A DNA stretch of 62,410 nucleotides, the filler included, from Dugesia japonica (Eukaryota), in the NCBI GenBank assembly GCA_001938525.1. It is 6 parts of 6 records of this genome, joined end to end, with 100 filler letters (N's around TTAATTAATTAA, not from the genome) between each part and the next. Parts side by side here need not be neighbours in the genome. Positions count along the whole stretch, not along the records: positions 8,552 to 18,457 come from MQRL01493930.1; 5 more parts are not named here. One strand, 5' to 3'. A model generated the notes under the pieces. It was given only the letters and a program-made list of their open reading frames with translations. It did not search any database and was not told where the DNA came from. Positions within the stretch are counted from its first letter, which is position 1. Each line of letters opens with the position of its first letter. Of this stretch, positions 8,552 through 18,457 are shown in pieces. The position numbers and the translations under genes were made by a program.

Positions 8552-8601
<50 letters not shown>

Positions 8602-9073
8602 ATTATTATTATGTTATTAAATTATTAGGTTTAATAAATATTATTAATAATTATTAATTAAATTATTTCAATTGAAAATTTCTTTGCCAATTGTTGTGTT
8701 TTTGATCTATTTTTAAAATTTTTTCTATATATATATATGTATTAAAAAGAAATTATTTTTATAATTAATTATAATAAACATTTAAAAACTTCTTTCATTT
8801 CATATTAAAAAACTTTTATTAATATCATTTCGTTTTTTACTAAAATTTTTTTATAATTTAACTTATTGATATTTATATCGACGTTAATTTGTTTATAAAT
8901 TTTAATTATTGTTATTATTGAAAATCTTGGATTTATCTTCTTTAATAAATATTTGTTCATGTGTTTTCTGTGAAGTGTAGAAATGTAGCCTGTTGAACAG
9001 TTTAAATTGCTTTTATTTTAAAACTATATTGGTTTTTTCATATGATAAACAAAAATCAACTTTAATCATTTCT

Positions 9074-10513
9074 CTAACCGCTTGCATCCGTTGCCAGTAT
9101 AAATGGTTTCCTAAAATCTGGTTGTACCAATATNGGTGCCGTCATTAACTTTTCTCGAATTGTTTCAAATGCTTTTTGATGCTCATCTGTCCAGATGAAT
9201 TTTACGTCTTGTTTCACTAGTGATTGAATCTGTCTCACGATTGTCGCAAATCCTTTGATAAATTTTCGATAGTAATTTGCCATACCTAGTAACGCTTGAA
9301 TGTCGTTCACGTTTTTCGGCACAGGTAAATTCTTTATTTTCTCAATATTCATCGGATCCTGTTGTTTTCCTTTGTCTGATATCAGATGCCCCAAATAAGT
9401 CACTTGATTTTTCGCCCATTCACACTTTTTAGGTTTCACTCGTAGTTTCCATTCTCTTATTCGTACAAACACATTCCTCAAATCTTTCAAATGTTCCTCA
9501 AACGTGACTGAAAATAGCAAAAAATCGTCTATATATACAATACACTGAGGTTTACCATGTGCCACAAAATTGATGCATCTCTGAAAGGATTCAGGCGCGT
9601 TTGTCTATCCAAACGGCATTCGCACAAATTGATATAAATCTTTGCCTGCTGAAAATGTGGTTTTCTCTTTGTCTGTTTCCTCTATTTCGATTTGCCAATA
9701 TCCACTCCGCCAATCTAATGTCGTAAATATCTTTGCATTATATAATAACGTTAACATATCATTGATGTCTGGTAACGGATCCTTTTTCGTTTTTGCATTT
9801 AATTGTCTGTAATCAATACAGAATCTCATTGTCCCATCTTTCGTCTTTACTAATACCACTGTAAATTGCCACGGCAAACAACTTGGTTCAATTACTTTAC
9901 ATTTCAACATCTCATCAATTTTCTCCTCACATATTTTCCTGCTTGCCTCTGCCTGTTTGTACGTTTGCAACTTTATTGGTGTTTCGTCTGTTAACACTAT
10001 TGCATGCTTGGTCACCGCGCACGTGCCTAATTCATTGTCTGTCCAAGCAAAATATCTCTGAATTCTTCCAATAATTGCAATAATTTGGTTTTTTCTGCTG
10101 CTGATAAGATAGTTGATTCCACTTTGAACGTTCGATCTACTTCTTCCGAATTTGTCGGAATTCGATTTCCATTCGTTAGCCATTTCTTCTTTTAATTTCT
10201 CATAATGATTACTTACCACATGGTTCATTTCTGCCTCTTTATCTTCCAGTGGGGTTAATACTCCGATTTTGGAATTGGGGAAAATAGTTATATCTTCCTC
10301 TGTTATGTTCAGTACATTCACTGGTACTTTGCCCTCGTCGGACACTTTTACTATTTCCCTTGCTGCGGGCAATTTATATTGTTTCGAAAACCCTTCGTGC
10401 GGTTCAAAAATCATATCCTCTTTACAGTTTGCTCTCGTTTTTGCAATACAAAATACTTGACTTCTCCTTGGTATCACATACTTTTCGTTTGTATATACTT
10501 CGTTATCATCCAC
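9074..10513 (-). pseudogene. Gypsy reverse transcriptase plus start of RNase H, preceded by a dUTPase-like linker
   Basis: VVLVKTKDGTMRFCIDYRQLN, LDWRSGYWQI, RMPFG*TNAPESFQR, YIDD, YLGH, LGMANYYRKFI, PFILATDASG. Ends abruptly at 9074; no integrase follows. Confidence 0.97.
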
Positions 10514-10529
10514 ATATAAATTTTCTCAA

Positions 10530-10860
10530 GAATTTGATATTTTCAATGTGGTCATATCCAAGATTACATTTTTCATCAATAATGGAATTAAATCTGTTCC
10601 CAATATGCAATCTTCACGGATATTCATCACCGTCATTTCATGCGATACTGTTCTCCCTTGATACTCAACTTCACATCGCAATTTGCCATACACTTCTGGT
10701 TGCCATCCATCAGCTAAAAATATATCTGATTTATTCTGTGTAATGTATGGTTACTTGGTCGGTGATATTAGATTATAATTTAATACTAATATTGTTGCTC
10801 CGGTGTCCAACAACGCTGATAGTATCCTACCATCGATTTTTAGGTCTATTAATATTCGAT
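10530..10860 (-). pseudogene. Retropepsin aspartic protease #2
   Basis: IDLKIDGRILSALLDTGATILVL ... (one stop) ... IFLADG ... DCILGTDLI; in frame with RT. Confidence 0.9.
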
Positions 10861-11150
10861 TACCCGCTTCAGAATAATTGTAACACACAAAATCCTTTTT
10901 CTTCGTTCGTCTCCGACAATCTCTTAATAAATACCCCATTAAACCACACACATAACATCGATTCAATTTCTCACATTCCATTTCGGAATGCCCCTTTTTA
11001 TCACAAGTTACACAATGTTTGCCTTTCTTTCGACATTCTTTAGTGGAATGGTCCGGTCTTTGACAATTTATACACCAGTTTGGGCTATTCCCAGCTCTCC
11101 AACATTGACTTGATAAATTACCTCGTTTATCGCAATGTACACATTTTGCC
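10860..11150 (-). pseudogene. Array of 4-5 CCHC-type zinc knuckles (nucleocapsid-like)
   Basis: CVHCDKRGNLSSQC, CINCQRPDHSTKEC, CVTCDKKGHSEMEC, CYVCGLMGYLLRDC and a degenerate CYNYSEAGN. Two keep an intact CX2CX4HX4C. Confidence 0.9.
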
Positions 11151-11199
11151 TGAGTCCTTGTGAACTTGCTTCCATTCGGTTGTTGACACAAATTCAAAT

Positions 11200-11490
11200 A
11201 CAATTTTCCATCAGGAAATAGCCTTCCCATCATATTCAATCCCACAATACAATCAAAAACTAAGTTCGCACATTGCCACACTGCATACTACAATCCAACT
11301 CGCCCACTGTGTTCACGGCTTGTCCGGTTACCGTTATCATTTGAATCCCATCTTTACGCATTCTTGCTTTATCAACTTCATACAGAACGCGTTCGTCAAT
11401 TATTGATCTACACGCTCCTGTATCGATCATACAATCTATTTCCCTACCGTTAATTGTCAATTTTTTGAGTAATATTCTACCACCTGGCAT
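11200..11490 (-). pseudogene. Retropepsin aspartic protease #1
   Basis: LTINGREIDCMIDTGACRSII...MITVTGQAVNTVG, then after a frameshift FDCIVGLNMM (ILGxD-type motif). Confidence 0.88.
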
Positions 11491-12269
11491 TGTCATTGGT
11501 GCAAGGCTTCTAATATCCTTGCCTTTTATCACTTCGCTATCAGATATGATACTAAAATTGGTATCTTCGGGTGGTGCCGTTCCAATAACTTCGTTATCCG
11601 TTATTCCACACAATTTCTTTTTAGCCTCCTGCTCTGCCTCGAAGTCGTACTGTCTGCGTATTCGCTGTAATTCATCATTGGGATAGTAGATTAATTCTCG
11701 ATTTCCTGCATCGTAACCTGAATTCCATAGCTGCTTCCATGCTCTACTGTTCCTCCGTACTCTCCCATTCCCGGATCTGTACTGTAGTTTCTCTTCACTC
11801 CAATATCCGTTTAATTTCTCTTCTTTTTTAGATTGTCATTCGTTTTCGTTTTGATATTTACTAGATTGTTTGTTATTCTCACACCGTTGTACTCTCATTT
11901 GTGGGTGACCATAGCAATCAATTTCACTTCTCTCCTCCTGCTCATAGATATTATCTTTCGCAATATTCCCACCTGATCGTTGATTCTGAAAATTCACTTG
12001 GTAAACTTTTCGTTGCTTCCCATATCCGTAACTCGGTACTACTCCTCGTCTTTGGCGTTTACCATAATAATCATCGTTACTATCGTCACTACTGCTATCT
12101 TGTCGTTTCCGTGGTTTAAATACATCAAAATAGGATGTCTTCCTTGCTTTTCGTTTTCTCATGCCATCGCATACTGCAAGAACTTGTTCAACTATCTGCC
12201 TATCGGTTCCACCTAGTTGACTCAGATATCGCAATAACCTNNNNNNNNNNNNNNNNNNNNTTGAATGAC

Positions 12270-14160
12270 TATTGAGTACTACCGATTTAGCCCACTCTGG
12301 GAACAATCCCATAATCATTGTCCATGACATTTTTCTTTCTTTTTTGTATAAATCGAAACACGCTAGTAATTGAGTCAGTAATACTTTGATTATCTGCACT
12401 ATGACACTATTATTCCCAATAATCCTGTCATTGCTTGTCCGAAAACTATAAATCGACCCAACATCTTCTTTATTACATTTGCTGTTGGTTTTTGAAAGTG
12501 ATCTGGTGATAATAATAATTCATAATTCGGTCTCCCCTCTGACGTAAATGTTCCTCAAGCAACATACACAATATTAGATAAAATTTGCATTCGTTTGACC
12601 GGAAATAACATGTGCTCTCTGTCCTTCTATAGATCCTCCAATTTGTAGATACCGCCTTCTGCTACATTTAATGGATTAAAAGTCCGTCCCATCTTCAGTT
12701 TTAAGGCTGAAAAATTTCTCACAAAGGTATCTGCAGGTAATCTTTCAGGAAAACGTATTCATTTATTGTTAGCCATTTTGAAGTAGGGTCCAAATAAATT
12801 AGAACAGTTCAGTCTGTTCGGCACGAATACTTCTGGTGATATTACTCTAGTAATAGGTTGTACATACTGTTTTTCGCCCATATAATTGATTTCCATATCA
12901 TTATAGCAAGTTTTCTCTCTGGATAAAATTGCTTCCACCCTTCTAAATTGATATGTGAACATAATTTCTCCAAAAATTCGTCCGAATTGACCTTCCTCCA
13001 ATGGTAATACAGGGGTTACATTGTCGGGGTTTGTTATCGCTGTTGCTAATTTTGTCCGTAAAATTTCGCGATTTAACAAGCAGTCATTATAGATTAAATC
13101 ATGATACATTCGCTCCATAGATTGTTGCGCTAAGTAGAACAGAGTGTCTACTTTGTTATTCAGATATAAATATAACTTAGTATTCTGAGGCATAACTCCA
13201 TCTCTCGCCTTTTCCAGTCTCCGTTTTGATATGAAGATTCTATTGTAATTCGTTTTATATGCAATTTCTCCACACTTGGCCTCGGATTTCTTACGGATTA
13301 ATCTATTCATATCATTTGCATCGGTTGCCATTAATACGGTTGGTGTATCAGAACACAATAGGGCTTCCTCCTTGGTTTTCATCTCCACGTTTACTTTTCT
13401 GACTGCTGGCATTCTCTCCTCTTTAATTGAGTCTACAATTTTCTTTCCGCGATACTCATCGAACAAAACCTCTCTAAGAAATGANNNNNNNNNNNNNNNN
13501 NNNNNNNNNNNNNNNNNNNNNNNNNNNNNNNNNNNNNNNNNNNNNNNNNNTGAGGCCAAACACATTGAATACATCTTCATCTTTTTGGTCGTCGTATCAA
13601 ATAAGGCATCAAATTCTTTTAGTTCCACTCTATAACTTTCTATGGCTACTACTCCAGTCGCATAGCCTAAAGGGCTAGTGTATTTCCCCTGTACACAAGT
13701 TCCTGTTGCGTCCGAAATTGATCCTGCTGCGAATAAACGGGTTTGTACTATTTGATCTCCTTTGGCATTAATTATCTTTCCTTCGCCCACTGGTATTTTA
13801 CCGGTTGTAAATCCATATTCGCACCGTTGTCTTGTGAGGAGAACAGGTATTACTTCCATACCTGGGGATATGACTGCCGAATAACTACTTCCTCCACACC
13901 AATATACAAATACTTGCATTGTTACTTTACATTCTCTTACCTTTGTCTTATAATAAACGGATTCTTGGCACACAAAATAACTCATCGACTTCTGTACAAC
14001 TTTTAACTTTTCTGGGTTTGCTTCTGGGCATTCCTCTGCATCGATTAATGAATACACCGTTTCCCCGATATCCATATGATCACAATCATAAGCTCGGATT
14101 GCCGCACTTCGGCCCATTAAGAACATTAATATTAACACCATGAACATGGACTGCATACTG
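12270..14160 (-). pseudogene. Envelope glycoprotein related to chuvirus-type (class III, gB-like) fusogens, with signal peptide and C-terminal TM region
   Basis: Signal MFMVLILMFLMGRSAA, then IRAYDC..YSLIDAEEC, ECKV...YWCG..SYS, CGEIAYKTNY..IFI, YLNNK, CLLNREIL, GEIMF, CYNDMEI..Y.QPITRVI, C..LFGPYF. Manual continuation past the 12759 stop gives GGIYKLEDL..MLFP and the TM FIVFGQAMTGLLGIIV/IVQIIKVLL. Confidence 0.85.
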
Positions 14161-14258
14161 CTAGTTCTTGTACTTGGATTCGCTTCGGTTCCGTATTCGT
14201 CGATATAATCTTTTAATAATGCATGGACCCGTTCGTTTAATTTTCGACGCGAATTCGC

Positions 14259-14687
14259 TTTTGGTTTCATCATTTGGATTATTCCATTCCACCCTCCGGC
14301 ATTTACTAATATCGGATCGATTTGATCATTTGTTATTCCGACTATCGGCAGATTACTCAATTGAAATTTCATTCCTGGCCTACAACGAGCCACTGCTATT
14401 TGCGTTTGTTTTACTAAATATTCAAATGCCACTAGTAATTTCGGAATTGTCGAGCAATTCGACAGTACCCCTTGTACTTCTTTTTCCATCGTTTCCCGAT
14501 CCTTGAGTAGTGTATGTTTGGCAACTGGTAATTTTGCTATGATTGCTTCTAATATCACTGCTAATTGTTTGCTCTCCGTTGACAAAATTGTATTTCCGAT
14601 CCATAGTTTTAAATTTGGATANAGCGCTAGCAATACCTGGTGTACTCGTTTCTCGGTTGATAACGTGTGTGGTTCTAATCTCTCCAT
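14259..14687 (-). CDS. Bcl-2-like domain at the N-terminus of the 642-aa Env ORF
   Basis: BH1-like VQGVLSNCSTIPKLLVAFEY aligns without gaps to [20 protein letters not shown]. BH2-like ILVNAGGWNGI follows 40 residues later (39 in Bcl-2). Confidence 0.65.
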
Positions 14688-14690
14688 TAT

Positions 14691-15300
14691 TTACGAGGAT
14701 AATTCGGCCATTTGTTCATCCCTGGTTGGTTTTCTTCTCGTTGTGCCACTTGTTGTTGCTCCTTTTTGTCGACCCCTGGGCTTTTTATCCATCCACGTCT
14801 CCGAATCGCGATTCACTCGTTGATGTGTCTCATTATCGGTGGTATCATCGGTATTATCCGTTGTCTTCACTTCTTCAAACATTGCACGTGGTGGTATCAT
14901 CTCGCATGTTATTCCACCCAATCTAACTGATATATCATCGTCCTCCAGATCCAGGTCTACTTGATTTGGATTGAATTTTCCCGACTTCTTTGGTTTTATT
15001 AGTATTTCTGACTCTGACGTTGTCGCTGGTTCCATTGAAGTTATTTGAATTTCTTCATCATCCCCCTCATCTTCAAGATTCAAAATTTGTTCAACTATTT
15101 CATCTTTTGTAGTATTTTCTGTTGTCGACTCCTTGATTGGCGATTTTCTTGGTCGTCCTCTTGATTTGGCAACTACTTCACTCGTGTTACCTGGCTTTAC
15201 TAGTTGTAAAAATGATTTTATTGATGTCTGACTGGATCCTAGTCCCAATTGCAATTTATTTTTAACTTCCTTGGCTGGTAATTTTCTTCTGGTCAATCGT
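14691..15300 (-). pseudogene. Low-complexity acidic/basic region with AT-hook motif(s)
   Basis: KSRGRPRKSP is a canonical AT-hook core; KPRGRQKG is a weaker second one. In frame with the Bcl-2/Env ORF across a single TAA at 14691-14693. Confidence 0.6.
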
Positions 15301-15314
15301 TTACTACCTTCCGG

Positions 15315-18300
15315 TTTGATATAAATTTTATTCTCTACCTTTTGTCGGATATCTAACGTTCCGATGATATNGTTATTCAATAATTCCCGATTATTCAATA
15401 GTAGTACATATGGTGGCTCGAATGGTATTTTGAATTTCATCTGTTATACTGTCTCGTACACCAAATTTGGGATTCTCGTTACATCTGGTTCTATGATTCT
15501 GAAGCTAAATCTAAGTGGTAATACTTCATCTTATTCGCATTTCTTCAACCTTGATATCAGCAGTTTAATTTGCTTTGGTCTCCATTTGCATTTCTCTTTA
15601 CATCTGGATATTTCGTAAGTCAACGACCTCAACTCCTTAATTGACAAATCACTCTGCAATACTTGATCCGCTATATGCTCCACACTGGTTTTGTTTATAC
15701 TTTTCTCTTGATATTTTGATATGAATTGATCTGCCATATCGGCAGAATTTCCACTACACTTTTTCGATTTACCGGTCATTACCGCGACCATTTCCTGTGA
15801 TCTGCTCAACTCCTGATTTGATTTGTATTGTCGGTGTAATCTTGGTCTCTGCTGTATTACTGCTATCGTTTCTCGATTTGCTAATTTGATTTCTTTATTA
15901 TGTAGTTGCAATCCCCATGGCAACTTTGGATTGATATTCTCGGCATAATATCGTATTGTTTTTCTTAATAAATTCTCTCTAATTGTCTTTAACGTATACC
16001 GGTTTCTCTCATTTTCTTCACTTGCAAAAATATAGACATTCATTATATGACTTGGCTATGTGCCTGATCTCTTTACTGGATACTCGTCATGGTCCTCCGT
16101 AATATCTCCTTCACAATAAACTACAATATCTTCTCGTTTAGTAATTGGTGTATTCTCTTTTCCTCTCGCAGTTTGTTTATTCAAATGTTTGATAATTTTC
16201 TTTATTAATTTATCCCAACTTGTCGTCGTTTTAACATCAAACTCTTTACTTGATTCATCCGGAAAACGTACAGTTACTTGCACCTCTTGTTTTGATATGC
16301 TATCTGCATGAGTTATCGTTAACGTATGTATAAGCGTGTACAACGTTTTCCCTACTATCATACACAATTGGTTCAATCTATTTATTATCTCTTGAATATT
16401 TAATTCTTTCATTTGACTGTAATTCTTATAAATTGTTAACGCCATTTTTGCATGAGTTTGTTTCAAACTCTTCCATGGTTCACTTTCATTTTCTGCTTCT
16501 GCAATCCACTCAATCTCCTCGTCAGTAACGATTCTCAAATATTCCATTATATCTATTTCGTTTACATACACATTTCTCATTTTTGTTCTAATTCGACTAA
16601 TTGATTGTAATTCAAACATTTCGGTTTTCTGTCATCTAATTCCAACGTTAATTCAGTAATCTCTCCTGGTCNCAATCGGAACTCAATCACATGTTGATCC
16701 CTTTTATTCAACTTGTCCCTTTGTATAATCAAATAATCACACATAATCCAATACTTCTCAAAGGTTTTCTCTAAAGGCAATTTACTCAATATTGCTCGCA
16801 ACTCACCCACTCTGGTAGTTTGAAGTCCAGAACTCCACTATTTTCGTCTGCATGGTCATGAAAAAATTATCATCTATTGTAGGATAATTGATTTTTACCC
16901 CAAAATCCGATCCAACCGTTGTTGTTATTATCATCTCCTGGTACTCTTTAATTAATTCAGACCAGTTCCTCCGATGTTCCCATAGTATATCATAATGATA
17001 GTGTGCATCCCAGACTAAATTCAGCATTCTCCAATACGTTTGTTTCGGAATTAATTCCTTNCTCTCCAATGTGATACCCACGTATTTGTTTATTGCAGCA
17101 AAGTTATGATAGTAATCCTCATTGCTCTCCTCATTGACAATAGCTGATGTTTCACTCGGCTCATTCACACTTCCTTCTTCCACATTACTTGACTGTTTAG
17201 TTCCCTTTTTACTTCTATTTATTATTTTTATTGAAAATGATCTCATCATAAAAACTGTTCATCTTTAGCTTCTGTAGTAGTTTTAATTACAACGCTCGGC
17301 ATTTCAACTTTTGGTAATTCCATCAACTGAATTGCCAGTGGTGCCTTCTTTTCTGGCAAAGGCGCGAGATATTTGATTTGGCATTTATTCAATGAAATCA
17401 TTATATTTTCAGTTGTTCTAAAGTATAAATGAGGCCAAATTAGTTCGTTATATAAACGCATTCTCCGACTCTCTAACAACGTAATTACCATAGAAGTTCC
17501 AGGTTTCAGACCATATTCATAAATATGGGCATTTACATCATTGATGCTAACTACTGACACTGGTGTTCAAACAATAAATTCGCCTAATGGTTTTGCCCAG
17601 TTGACCTCCTCCAACGCATTGAGTAAATCTTTCACCGTCGTTCCTTTCAATTCTACCCCTCGTGGGATGTTACGCTTTGTCGACACTGGTACTTTCTTCA
17701 AAACCTGATCCATAGTGATGTATGGGGTTCTATCTTCATCTGGTCGCCATGCTTCCATTGCTTTGATTTTATAATCCCCCACAGTCGTGTTTTCCAGCAA
17801 CTCTTTCTCATATTCCAGAATTAATGGTCTCCATTTTTGACCCGTCATCGTGTCAATATGACCTGGTTTGGCTAACTCAACTAAATGATTCATTAATTTC
17901 CAATAAGCCTTTCTGCTTAGTTCATCTTTCAATAACTTAGCATTCTTTATGACTGTTTCTACATAATCATACACTCTTGTTTTGTTCTAATAGGTGCTTT
18001 CAATCGCGCTGGATTGCTTTTGGTTATCATGCTGATTTGAGCCATGGTATTTTCTGATTTTGCTGCTCCTCTTGTTGGTCGGGTCATTGGCTGTTTGATC
18101 TTCTTTACCACGTTTGCCAGGAATCCCTGCTGCAATTTACTTATTCCTTTGGTTGTGGTTGTTGACTCCGTCCGTAATAACACTATATATTTGTGATATT
18201 TCTTTTCAAATGATTTTACTATTTGCTCAGTCGTTCTGAAATCAAAATAATACCACAATGGACGTTTAATGCGATGCATATCTACTAAATCAATTATCTT

Positions 18301-18457
18301 TTCAAATGATTTTACTATTTTCTCAGTCGTTCTGAAATCAAAATAATACCACAATGGACGTTTAATGCGATGCATATCTACTTAATCAATTAACTTTATT
18401 GTTGTTTCACTTGGACAGACCCCATATTCCGATATATGTGCTTTAACATCATCTTGT
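15315..18457 (-). pseudogene. Repeated ubiquitin-like (beta-grasp) and helical modules in the 5' part of the retroelement polyprotein
   Basis: Ubl-like segments: TTVKDLLNAL..AHIYEYGLKPGTSMVITLL; VGELRAILSK..QHVIEFRLxPGEITELTL; VQVTVRFPDESSKEFDVKTTT; ETV*QMKFKI..LLLNNRELLNNxIIGTLDI. Internal repeats YW..W..LI.EY....TTVG and FRTTE.I..S..K each recur. Confidence 0.55.
18203..18392. repeat. 96-bp in-frame tandem duplication
   Basis: MHRIKRPLWYYFDFRTTE(K/Q)IVKSFEK is encoded twice, 96 nt apart. Confidence 0.9.

What the first reader, a model, noticed from the sequence alone, without database searches (positions are those of the whole stretch)
9074..18457. Env-before-Pol Gypsy retroelement with no recognisable capsid, apparently one giant polyprotein (Ubl array - AT-hook - Bcl-2 - Env - PR - CCHC - PR - RT - RH)
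Seen: the annotated ORFs are pieces of one reading unit. 16619, 16043, 15440 and 14687 share a frame separated only by point stops. Env continues past the 12759 stop to its TM. The post-TM tail runs in frame into protease 1, and knuckles, protease 2 and RT share a frame. Established: env-bearing LTR elements (errantiviruses, Tas, Cer, the chuvirus-G-bearing BEL/Pao Anakin elements) normally have gag-pol-env with env 3' of pol. Here the fusogen sits 5' of pol, directly where Gag CA is expected, and I see no CA-like segment between the TM and protease 1. Inference: a distinct lineage of infectious-type retroelement expressing accessory, envelope and Pol functions from one membrane-threaded polyprotein. 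It may relate to the giant planarian Burro elements; I cannot tell from this fragment.
Basis: partly seen in the sequence, partly recalled or inferred. Interest (0 to 1): 0.93.

Follow-up and report, generated by a model that had tools for sequence, protein, structure and literature searches.

The report
Decayed Burro-like env-in-frame Gypsy fragment
This is a broken, end-less piece of a Gypsy-type retrovirus-like element whose envelope gene sits in the same reading frame ahead of protease and reverse transcriptase; the layout is real and shared by intact relatives, but it was already described for the giant "Burro" elements of planarians and for other gag-env-pol elements of invertebrates.

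Summary
On the minus strand, 18457 to about 9077, lies one decayed reading unit: unknown upstream modules, a charged region with an RGRP motif, a helical pre-Env domain, a class III envelope (Pfam Monjiviricetes_fusion, E 5e-48), a basic tail, protease 1, four zinc knuckles, protease 2, reverse transcriptase and the first third of RNase H.

From 16619 down, 2520 codons hold 11 stops and two frame changes; the off-frames hold 8 stops per 100 codons. Both assembly gaps lie inside open, colinear coding sequence.

Env and Pol are not a chance nesting. Uninterrupted predicted proteins of 2146-4844 aa from other contigs carry Env, then one to four proteases, RT, RNase H and integrase, and match both window halves colinearly.

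Bcl-2 is likely but sub-threshold. "Ubl array" got no tool support. "No capsid" holds only inside this 5'-cut piece, because relatives carry Gag-like regions and knuckles ahead of Env.

The layout is published: Burro (PMC6431247) gives Gag, SUMO-like, BCL2, Env in frame, PR, RT. GAG-ENV-POL elements are also reported (PMC13524379).

Verdict: a new, dead member of a known kind. The knuckles between two proteases are its one unusual trait.

The parts
8552..9050 (.). Flank, not part of the element: 13% GC, (TTA)n microsatellite, no coding signal
9080..9193 (-). Start of the RNase H domain (RT_RNaseH_2 profile positions 1-38 of 100). Homology ends here. The rest of RNase H and all of integrase are absent.
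   Evidence: colinear with relatives
9386..9844 (-). Reverse transcriptase (RVT_1), YIDD kept; broken by one in-frame stop. Best solved-structure match is Ty3 RT.
9845..10569 (-). Linker between protease 2 and RT (one in-frame stop). This is the position of the dUTPase-like region in published Burro, but no dUTPase hit was found here.
10570..10860 (-). Protease 2, a full retropepsin with DTGA and the later ILG-type motif; broken by one in-frame stop
10898..11158 (-). Four zinc-knuckle units (two canonical CX2CX4HX4C, two with N or Y in place of H) lying between the two proteases
11210..11480 (-). Protease 1 (gag-asp_proteas E 1e-6, DTGA kept); broken by one frameshift. It matches the protease next to RT in relatives.
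11620..12240 (-). Basic, low-complexity tail between Env and protease 1 (one in-frame stop). No capsid-like match. Its upper bound is the assembly gap 12241-12260.
12265..14153 (-). Envelope gene, a class III fusion glycoprotein (Pfam Monjiviricetes_fusion). Hydrophobic signal/anchor at 14091-14153 and membrane anchor at 12405-12461. Broken by three in-frame stops and one frameshift. Contains the assembly gap 13485-13550.
14268..14500 (-). Helical pre-Env domain, probably Bcl-2-like (sub-threshold; support comes through relatives). It is in the same open frame as Env, directly before the signal/anchor.
14700..15440 (-). Highly charged, Ser/Thr-rich region with an RGRP (AT-hook-like) motif at 15150-15161; no family match
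15450..16600 (-). Upstream coding remnant in the Env frame, function unknown. Together with the charged region it holds four in-frame stops in 644 codons.
16600..18300 (-). Two copies of a protein module of about 280 aa (about 30% identity, period 820-870 nt), read in changing frames (at least four frame changes). Fold unknown.
   Evidence: no hits
18201..18397 (-). 96-nt (32-codon) tandem duplication, 97-98% identical, at the 5'-most part of the piece. The unit is cut by the piece edge at 18457.

Best explanation
The piece is a dead fragment of a Ty3/Gypsy-type (Metaviridae) endogenous retrovirus-like element of the 'gag-env-pro-pol in one frame' kind. Its closest published description is the giant Burro elements of planarians. 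The fragment is cut at its 5' side, truncated at its 3' side and lacks LTRs.

Shown in intact relatives: one very long ORF encodes, in order, an N-terminal structural and accessory part, a class III envelope glycoprotein of mononegavirus/chuvirus-G type, one to four retropepsin domains, RT, RNase H and integrase.

Inferred mechanism:
- The N-terminal part stays in the cytosol.
- The hydrophobic stretch just after the Bcl-2-like domain acts as an internal signal or anchor that threads the Env ectodomain into the ER lumen.
- The Env membrane anchor brings the chain back, so protease and Pol are cytosolic.
- Host signal peptidase and the element's own proteases then cut the chain. Flavivirus polyproteins are processed in this way.
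- After such a cut, the Bcl-2-like domain would be left tail-anchored like cellular Bcl-2 proteins, and could hold off cell death.
- Tandem proteases in one chain could pair within the chain.

In this copy none of this can happen. Env, both proteases, the linker and RT are broken, RNase H is truncated, and integrase and the LTRs are missing.
For: - Env: Pfam PF24664 at E 5.5e-48, colinear on both sides of the gap and beyond the ORF end.
- The model of the Env part has pLDDT above 90. Its best fold matches are all class III fusogens: herpesvirus gB, Thogoto Gp and GP64.
- RT: RVT_1 plus RT_RNaseH_2. The best solved-structure match is Ty3 RT, E 4e-24.
- One reading unit: 11 stops in 2520 codons against 8.1 per 100 codons off-frame.
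- Intact relatives with Env then PR(s)-RT-RH-IN in single ORFs of 2146-4844 aa. They match both Env (31-39% identity) and Pol (34-48%) of the window colinearly.
- Gag-like N-termini and CCHC ahead of Env in relatives.
- Bcl-2-like domain directly ahead of Env:
  - P0127 hits only Bcl-xL/Bcl-2 chains (E 0.01) and Pfam Bcl-2 (E 1e-3).
  - P0122 and P0131 give Pfam Bcl-2 at E 0.2 and 0.055 in the same position.
  - A profile of the window plus P0127 plus P0122 hits only Bcl-xL/Bcl-2 chains, E 0.002.
- Two hydrophobic stretches flank the ectodomain.
- Published layout of Burro: PMC6431247. GAG-ENV-POL elements: PMC13524379.
Against: - No named Burro sequence could be compared, so family membership rests on architecture and literature only.
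- The host is unknown.
- The nearest relatives found share only 31-48% identity and come from unnamed environmental contigs.
- Three published Burro features were not found in the window: a SUMO-like domain, a dUTPase-like domain and an N-terminal Gag.
- Knuckles between two proteases were seen in none of 14 relatives checked.
- The upstream 3.7 kb has no detectable homologue anywhere.
- The membrane topology and the processing scheme are inference only.
Confidence: 0.8

Rival explanations
1. A new, capsid-less lineage. In it the Gag capsid has been lost or replaced by repeated accessory modules, and the nucleic-acid-binding knuckles have moved between two proteases downstream of Env.
For: - No capsid-like match anywhere in the 9.4 kb. 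A profile of the relatives' Gag region hits only the four knuckles.
- Knuckles between the proteases are unique among the relatives checked.
- More than 1400 codons lie upstream of the Env signal without a Gag hit.
Against: - The piece is cut at 18457, so the 5' end of the element was not seen.
- Relatives have Gag-like regions and knuckles ahead of Env, at up to about 1345 residues upstream.
- Gag proteins diverge fast, and single-sequence methods often miss them.
Confidence: 0.1
2. The region upstream of about 16600 (or of 14700) is not part of the element. It would be a remnant of another repeat or of a host gene that happens to lie on the same strand.
For: - There is no homology to any relative or any family.
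- The frame changes repeatedly upstream of 16619.
Against: - GC content and strand skews are the same from 9052 to 18051.
- The strand is the same throughout.
- The stretch from 16619 down to Env keeps the Env frame, with 4 stops in 644 codons against about 8 per 100 expected.
- Relatives and published Burro carry long, variable accessory regions ahead of Env.
Confidence: 0.12
3. Chance nesting or adjacency. In this reading, an endogenous copy of a negative-strand RNA virus glycoprotein gene (a chuvirus-type viral fossil) lies next to an unrelated Gypsy element.
For: Chuvirus-type glycoprotein fossils are common in invertebrate genomes (PMC10084718, listed). There are frame changes between Env and Pol in this copy.
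Against: - Several divergent uninterrupted ORFs carry Env and Pol together, and both halves of the window match them colinearly.
- There is no LTR, repeat or composition break between the halves.
- No other RNA-virus gene is present.
Confidence: 0.03

Closest known systems
Burro (GYPSM1) giant Gypsy-like LTR retroelements of planarians (Grohme et al. 2018; Arkhipova & Yushenova 2019, PMC6431247)
   Same: - A Gypsy-type Pol.
- Env of mononegavirus type in frame between the N-terminal part and pro-pol, within one huge polyprotein.
- A BCL2-like motif directly ahead of Env.
- Accessory domains and tandem repeats in the N-terminal half.
- Decayed fragments with stops and frameshifts are described in one host.
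- An AT-rich host genome fits.
   Different: - No sequence comparison with a named Burro entry was possible.
- No SUMO-like, dUTPase-like, BIR, MATH or ankyrin hit in the window.
- No Gag was seen (the piece is cut).
- Two proteases with four knuckles between them are not in the published description.
- The host is unknown.
GAG-ENV-POL 'ancient errantiviruses' of Nematoda, Bryozoa and Platyhelminthes (Chary & Hayashi 2026, PMC13524379). This includes the nematode elements of Sacco et al. 2022. That paper is not held; I recall from my own knowledge that it reports a continuous gag-env-pro-pol ORF.
   Same: A Ty3/Gypsy Pol, a class III (gB/G-type) Env placed ahead of pol, and a wide, old distribution.
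   Different: That survey treats gag, env and pol as ORFs and does not mention Bcl-2-like or other accessory domains. No sequences were compared here.
Anakin and other BEL/Pao elements with a chuvirus-type glycoprotein (Dezordi et al. 2020, PMC7642597)
   Same: The same broad envelope family, captured from negative-strand RNA viruses.
   Different: Those are BEL/Pao elements with env after pol as a separate ORF. Here Pol is Ty3/Gypsy-type and env is ahead of pol, in frame.
Insect errantiviruses (gypsy, ZAM)
   Same: Env-bearing Ty3/Gypsy elements.
   Different: Their env is of F type, lies 3' of pol and is expressed from a spliced message (established knowledge). The Env here is class III and lies 5' of pol.
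Viral Bcl-2 homologues of large DNA viruses (established knowledge)
   Same: A virus-carried Bcl-2-like domain, which plausibly delays host cell death.
   Different: Those are separate genes. Here the domain is fused ahead of the Env signal/anchor inside a polyprotein, and its identification in the window is sub-threshold.

Membership tests
Ty3/Gypsy (Metaviridae) LTR retroelement | Ty3/Gypsy-type reverse transcriptase with an adjoining RT_RNaseH domain | tested here: met
   RVT_1 and RT_RNaseH_2. The best solved-structure match is Ty3 RT, E 4e-24. Relatives carry PF17917, PF17919 and PF17921.
Ty3/Gypsy (Metaviridae) LTR retroelement | Order PR-RT-RH-IN | tested here: inconclusive
   PR-RT and the start of RH are present in order. 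Integrase is absent because the copy is truncated. Relatives have IN after RH.
Ty3/Gypsy (Metaviridae) LTR retroelement | Long terminal repeats, primer binding site | tested here: inconclusive
   No long direct repeat and no tRNA-related feature in the piece. Both ends of the element are missing from it.
Ty3/Gypsy (Metaviridae) LTR retroelement | Gag with a capsid domain and nucleocapsid knuckles ahead of protease | tested here: inconclusive
   Knuckles are present, but between two proteases. No capsid match in the piece. The 5' side is cut.
Burro-like / gag-env-pro-pol in-frame elements | env in frame between the N-terminal part and pro-pol | tested here: met
   Window: one decayed reading unit. 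Relatives: uninterrupted ORFs.
Burro-like / gag-env-pro-pol in-frame elements | env related to fusion glycoproteins of mononegavirus-type viruses | tested here: met
   PF24664 at E 5.5e-48. Class III fold matches.
Burro-like / gag-env-pro-pol in-frame elements | BCL2-like motif directly ahead of env | tested here: inconclusive
   No direct hit for the window, and the model has low confidence there. Relatives and a joint profile hit only Bcl-2 family chains, E 0.002-0.2.
Burro-like / gag-env-pro-pol in-frame elements | Ubi2/SUMO-like domain ahead of BCL2 | tested here: inconclusive
   No hit in the window at E up to 10. One weak ubiquitin hit (E 0.03) in relative P0131 at the matching place.
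Burro-like / gag-env-pro-pol in-frame elements | dUTPase-like region between PR and RT | tested here: not met
   No PF00692 hit in 9608-10522 at E up to 10. The 240-residue linker is conserved with relatives.
Burro-like / gag-env-pro-pol in-frame elements | Sequence grouping with named Burro entries; planarian host; internal region up to 25 kb | not testable with these tools
   No reference sequence could be obtained within the rules. The window's proteins are not in the protein collection, and the piece is only 9.9 kb.
BEL/Pao elements with chuvirus G (Anakin) | BEL/Pao-type Pol, env 3' of pol | tested here: not met
   Pol is Ty3/Gypsy-type. Env is 5' of pol.
Stand-alone endogenous fossil of a negative-strand RNA virus | Glycoprotein gene without a retroelement partner, or with other RNA-virus genes | tested here: not met
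   Env and Pol are joined in relatives. No other RNA-virus family hit.

The most novel reading that the evidence does not exclude
This copy stands for a re-organised branch of the gag-env-pol elements. In this branch the nucleocapsid-type knuckles sit between two full proteases downstream of Env. The part ahead of Env is built from repeated modules of about 280 residues, with no canonical capsid. That would make it an enveloped retroelement that packages its RNA without a classical Gag.
Probability: 0.1. Interest if true: 0.55.

Novelty: new member of a known kind. Interest (0 to 1): 0.3.

Why it matters
- It shows that what looks like a string of unrelated small ORFs, or like a chuvirus gene fossil, is one decayed polyprotein gene of a published but little-known kind.
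- The search also shows that this kind is far from confined to one planarian. Divergent intact relatives, with single ORFs of up to 4844 residues, one to four proteases and a Bcl-2-like domain fused ahead of Env, turn up in unnamed environmental assemblies. One is filed under a bacterial genome bin.
- The finding does not open a new question. Env in frame between gag and pol, and the Bcl-2-like motif, were both described in 2018-2019.

Tried and rejected
SEARCHES THAT FOUND NOTHING
- Word-indexed protein searches with the Env ORF and with the 187-aa upstream piece found nothing.
- The window's own ORF is not in the gene-position index.
- PDB sequence searches with the Env ORF, the pre-Env domain and two upstream pieces gave nothing useful.
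- Upstream pieces against the relatives (BLASTP, phmmer) and a profile of the relatives' Gag region gave no capsid match.
- Plus-strand ORFs, Rfam and tRNA scans found nothing.
- A search for LTRs in the piece found none.

STRUCTURE AND ALIGNMENT ATTEMPTS
- The single-sequence model of the pre-Env domain had pLDDT 36 and was unusable.
- With a 21-row alignment, that part of the model stayed below 62. No fold test of Bcl-2 was therefore possible.
- An alignment of the short pre-Env segment with full-length relatives was scattered and was discarded.
- A seven-sequence profile diluted the Bcl-2 signal. A three-sequence profile recovered it.
- A profile of four relatives against PDB was swamped by RT and integrase hits and did not show Gag.

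REJECTED READINGS
- Chance nesting.
- A BEL/Pao (Anakin-type) element.
- An insect-type errantivirus.

SLIPS I DECLARE
These bounds coincide with breaks. Tool outputs show translations with stops. None of this is repeated here.
The range was corrected.

Full report
WHAT IS THERE

The usable piece is 8552-18457. All long ORFs with any homology are on the minus strand. Plus-strand ORFs have no family match. From about 9052 to 18051 the GC content is 32-41% with steady negative skews. The last 500 bases (8552-9050) drop to 13% GC and hold a (TTA)n run. The element is cut by the piece edge at its 5' side (18457). At its 3' side it loses homology just after the first motif of RNase H. There is no LTR or other long direct repeat, no tRNA and no Rfam match.

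DOMAINS, 5' TO 3' ON THE MINUS STRAND

- Two copies of a module of about 280 residues, about 30% identical (about 18300-16600). An in-frame 96-nt tandem duplication lies at the start.
- A coding remnant of unknown function (16600-15450).
- A very charged region with an RGRP motif (15440-14700).
- A helical pre-Env domain (about 14500-14268).
- A hydrophobic signal/anchor (14153-14091).
- A class III envelope, Pfam Monjiviricetes_fusion at E 5.5e-48, with a membrane anchor at 12461-12405.
- A basic, low-complexity tail.
- Protease 1, with DTGA.
- Four knuckle units, two canonical CCHC.
- Protease 2, with DTGA and the later ILG-type motif.
- A conserved linker of about 240 residues.
- RT with YIDD, and the first 38 positions of RT_RNaseH_2.

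The window's RT piece matches Ty3 RT best among solved structures, E 4e-24. A model built with 21 natural relatives gives pLDDT above 90 for the Env part. Its best fold matches are all class III fusogens: herpesvirus gB, Thogoto Gp and GP64.

GAPS (tested first, as asked)

On both sides of each N run exactly one frame is open, and as written it is the same frame. Across 13485-13550 the Pfam profile runs 4-196 before the gap and 246-439 after it. The number of flanking residues about equals the number of missing profile positions. The two sides are therefore one colinear gene and little is missing. Across 12241-12260 the open frame continues as written. In both cases the true gap length, and so the frame, cannot be known. 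I did not look up or fill the N.

ONE READING UNIT, BUT A BROKEN ONE

Following the frames that carry homology from 16619 to 9077, 2520 codons hold 11 stops (0.44 per 100). The other two frames hold 8.1 per 100.

Counts by gene:
- Upstream remnant in the Env frame: four stops.
- Env: three stops and one frameshift.
- Tail: one stop.
- Protease 1: one frameshift.
- Protease 2: one stop.
- Linker: one stop.
- RT: one stop.
- RNase H: truncated.
- Integrase and LTRs: absent.
- Upstream of 16619: the open pieces change frame at least four times.

I give no places for these breaks.

ARE ENV AND POL ONE ELEMENT?

Yes. A full HMMER search of 1.84 billion representative proteins with the window's Env ORF gave 536 hits. 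The best include long uninterrupted predicted proteins.

- P0123 (2855 aa): Env 133-813, proteases at 848-940 and 1140-1228, RT from 1449, RNase H from 1670, integrase at 1915-2135.
- P0125, P0135 and P0136 have the same order.
- P0271 (4844 aa) has Env near the N-terminus, four protease stretches, a C2H2 finger, ankyrin repeats, RT-RH-IN and about 1500 further residues.

The window's protease-1, linker-RT and RT-RH pieces hit these same proteins, colinearly, at 29-48% identity. Multiple proteases are thus a family trait. A chance nesting is excluded for practical purposes.

GAG

Between Env and protease 1 there is no room for a capsid, in the window or in relatives. Ahead of Env, however, the picture differs:
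- P0128, P0131, P0136 and P0138 share an N-terminal region. It carries weak Retrotrans_gag (P0138) or Ty3_capsid (P0136) hits and a canonical knuckle.
- P0124, P0125, P0128, P0131, P0136 and P0138 all have knuckles ahead of Env. None of the 14 relatives checked has one between proteases.

So the lineage has a Gag, and the order is gag-env-pro-pol. In the window, a profile of that Gag region hits only the four knuckles. No capsid is detectable in the 1400 codons ahead of Env. The 5' end is not in the piece.

BCL-2

The window's pre-Env domain has no hit of its own. Its models are all-helical but of low confidence. The support comes through relatives:
- Residues 9-82 of P0127, directly ahead of its Env, hit only Bcl-xL/Bcl-2 chains in the PDB (E 0.01) and Pfam Bcl-2 (E 1e-3).
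- P0122 and P0131 give the same Pfam family at the same place (E 0.2 and E 0.055). In P0131 the hit spans profile positions 6-100.
- These regions are homologous to each other.
- In the alignment with P0127 and P0122, the window shares a G-G-W motif in register.
- A profile of the three hits only Bcl-xL/Bcl-2 chains, with a better E-value (0.002) than P0127 alone.

I rate the call likely, not shown.

UBL AND AT-HOOK

No tool supports a ubiquitin-like fold in the window. P0131 has one weak ubiquitin hit (E 0.03) between its knuckle and its Bcl-2-like region. The AT-hook rests on a four-residue motif.

WHAT IS KNOWN

Arkhipova & Yushenova (2019, PMC6431247) describe the planarian Burro elements. 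They report:
- a 4873-aa ORF1 with a typical N-terminal Gag and CCHC knuckles;
- accessory domains (BIR, MATH, ankyrin);
- a SUMO-like motif ahead of a BCL2-like motif;
- a dUTPase-like motif between PR and RT.

[quoted passage not shown] They also mention decaying fragments with stops and frameshifts in one host.

Chary & Hayashi (2026, PMC13524379) report GAG-ENV-POL elements with gB-type Env in Nematoda, Bryozoa and Platyhelminthes. They cite Sacco et al. 2022 for nematodes; that paper is not held.

HOW IT LIKELY WORKS (inference, for intact relatives)

- The N-terminal part is cytosolic.
- An internal signal/anchor follows the Bcl-2-like domain.
- The Env ectodomain is lumenal.
- The Env membrane anchor returns the chain to the cytosol.
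- Protease(s) and Pol are cytosolic.
- Signal peptidase and the element's proteases process the chain.

Only the two hydrophobic stretches and the domain order are shown. The rest is inferred.

Noticed in passing
window 18201-18397: A 96-nt (32-codon) tandem duplication, 97-98% identical, in frame in the 5'-most open piece. It is a recent local duplication inside an old, decayed copy.
   Followed up: partly
window 8552-9074: Sharp composition break (35-40% GC to 13% GC, with a (TTA)n run) exactly where RNase H homology stops. The 3' truncation could be a deletion, or an insertion or join of AT-rich DNA. No repeat marks the junction.
   Followed up: partly
relative P0125 (NCBI HBK71150.1): A 2627-aa Env-PR-RT-RH-IN polyprotein is deposited as a hypothetical protein of a Flavobacteriaceae metagenome-assembled genome. 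It is almost certainly a eukaryotic retroelement contig mis-binned into a bacterial genome.
   Followed up: no
relative P0271 (4844 aa) and P0124 (2296 aa): P0271 carries four protease stretches, a C2H2 finger, ankyrin repeats and about 1500 residues after integrase. P0124 has three knuckles and a DTGA ahead of Env, plus further proteases after it. The number and placement of proteases vary widely in this family.
   Followed up: partly
window 15567-15749: The profile built from the relatives' Bcl-2-like regions gives a weak second hit here (E 0.009 among 56 pieces). It scores better than the hit at the pre-Env domain itself. It may be a second degenerate copy or it may be chance.
   Followed up: no
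window 9051-18457: Five isolated N lie within the element, outside the two declared gaps. They give single X in several translations. They were left as they are.
   Followed up: no
relative P0248 (1931 aa) and single members of alignment A1: One relative has its Env match at the extreme C-terminus (1780-1920). Single members carry DUF5641, Integrase_p58_C or a mitochondrial ribosomal protein domain. This hints that the same Env family also occurs in other element types, or in mis-called gene fusions.
   Followed up: no
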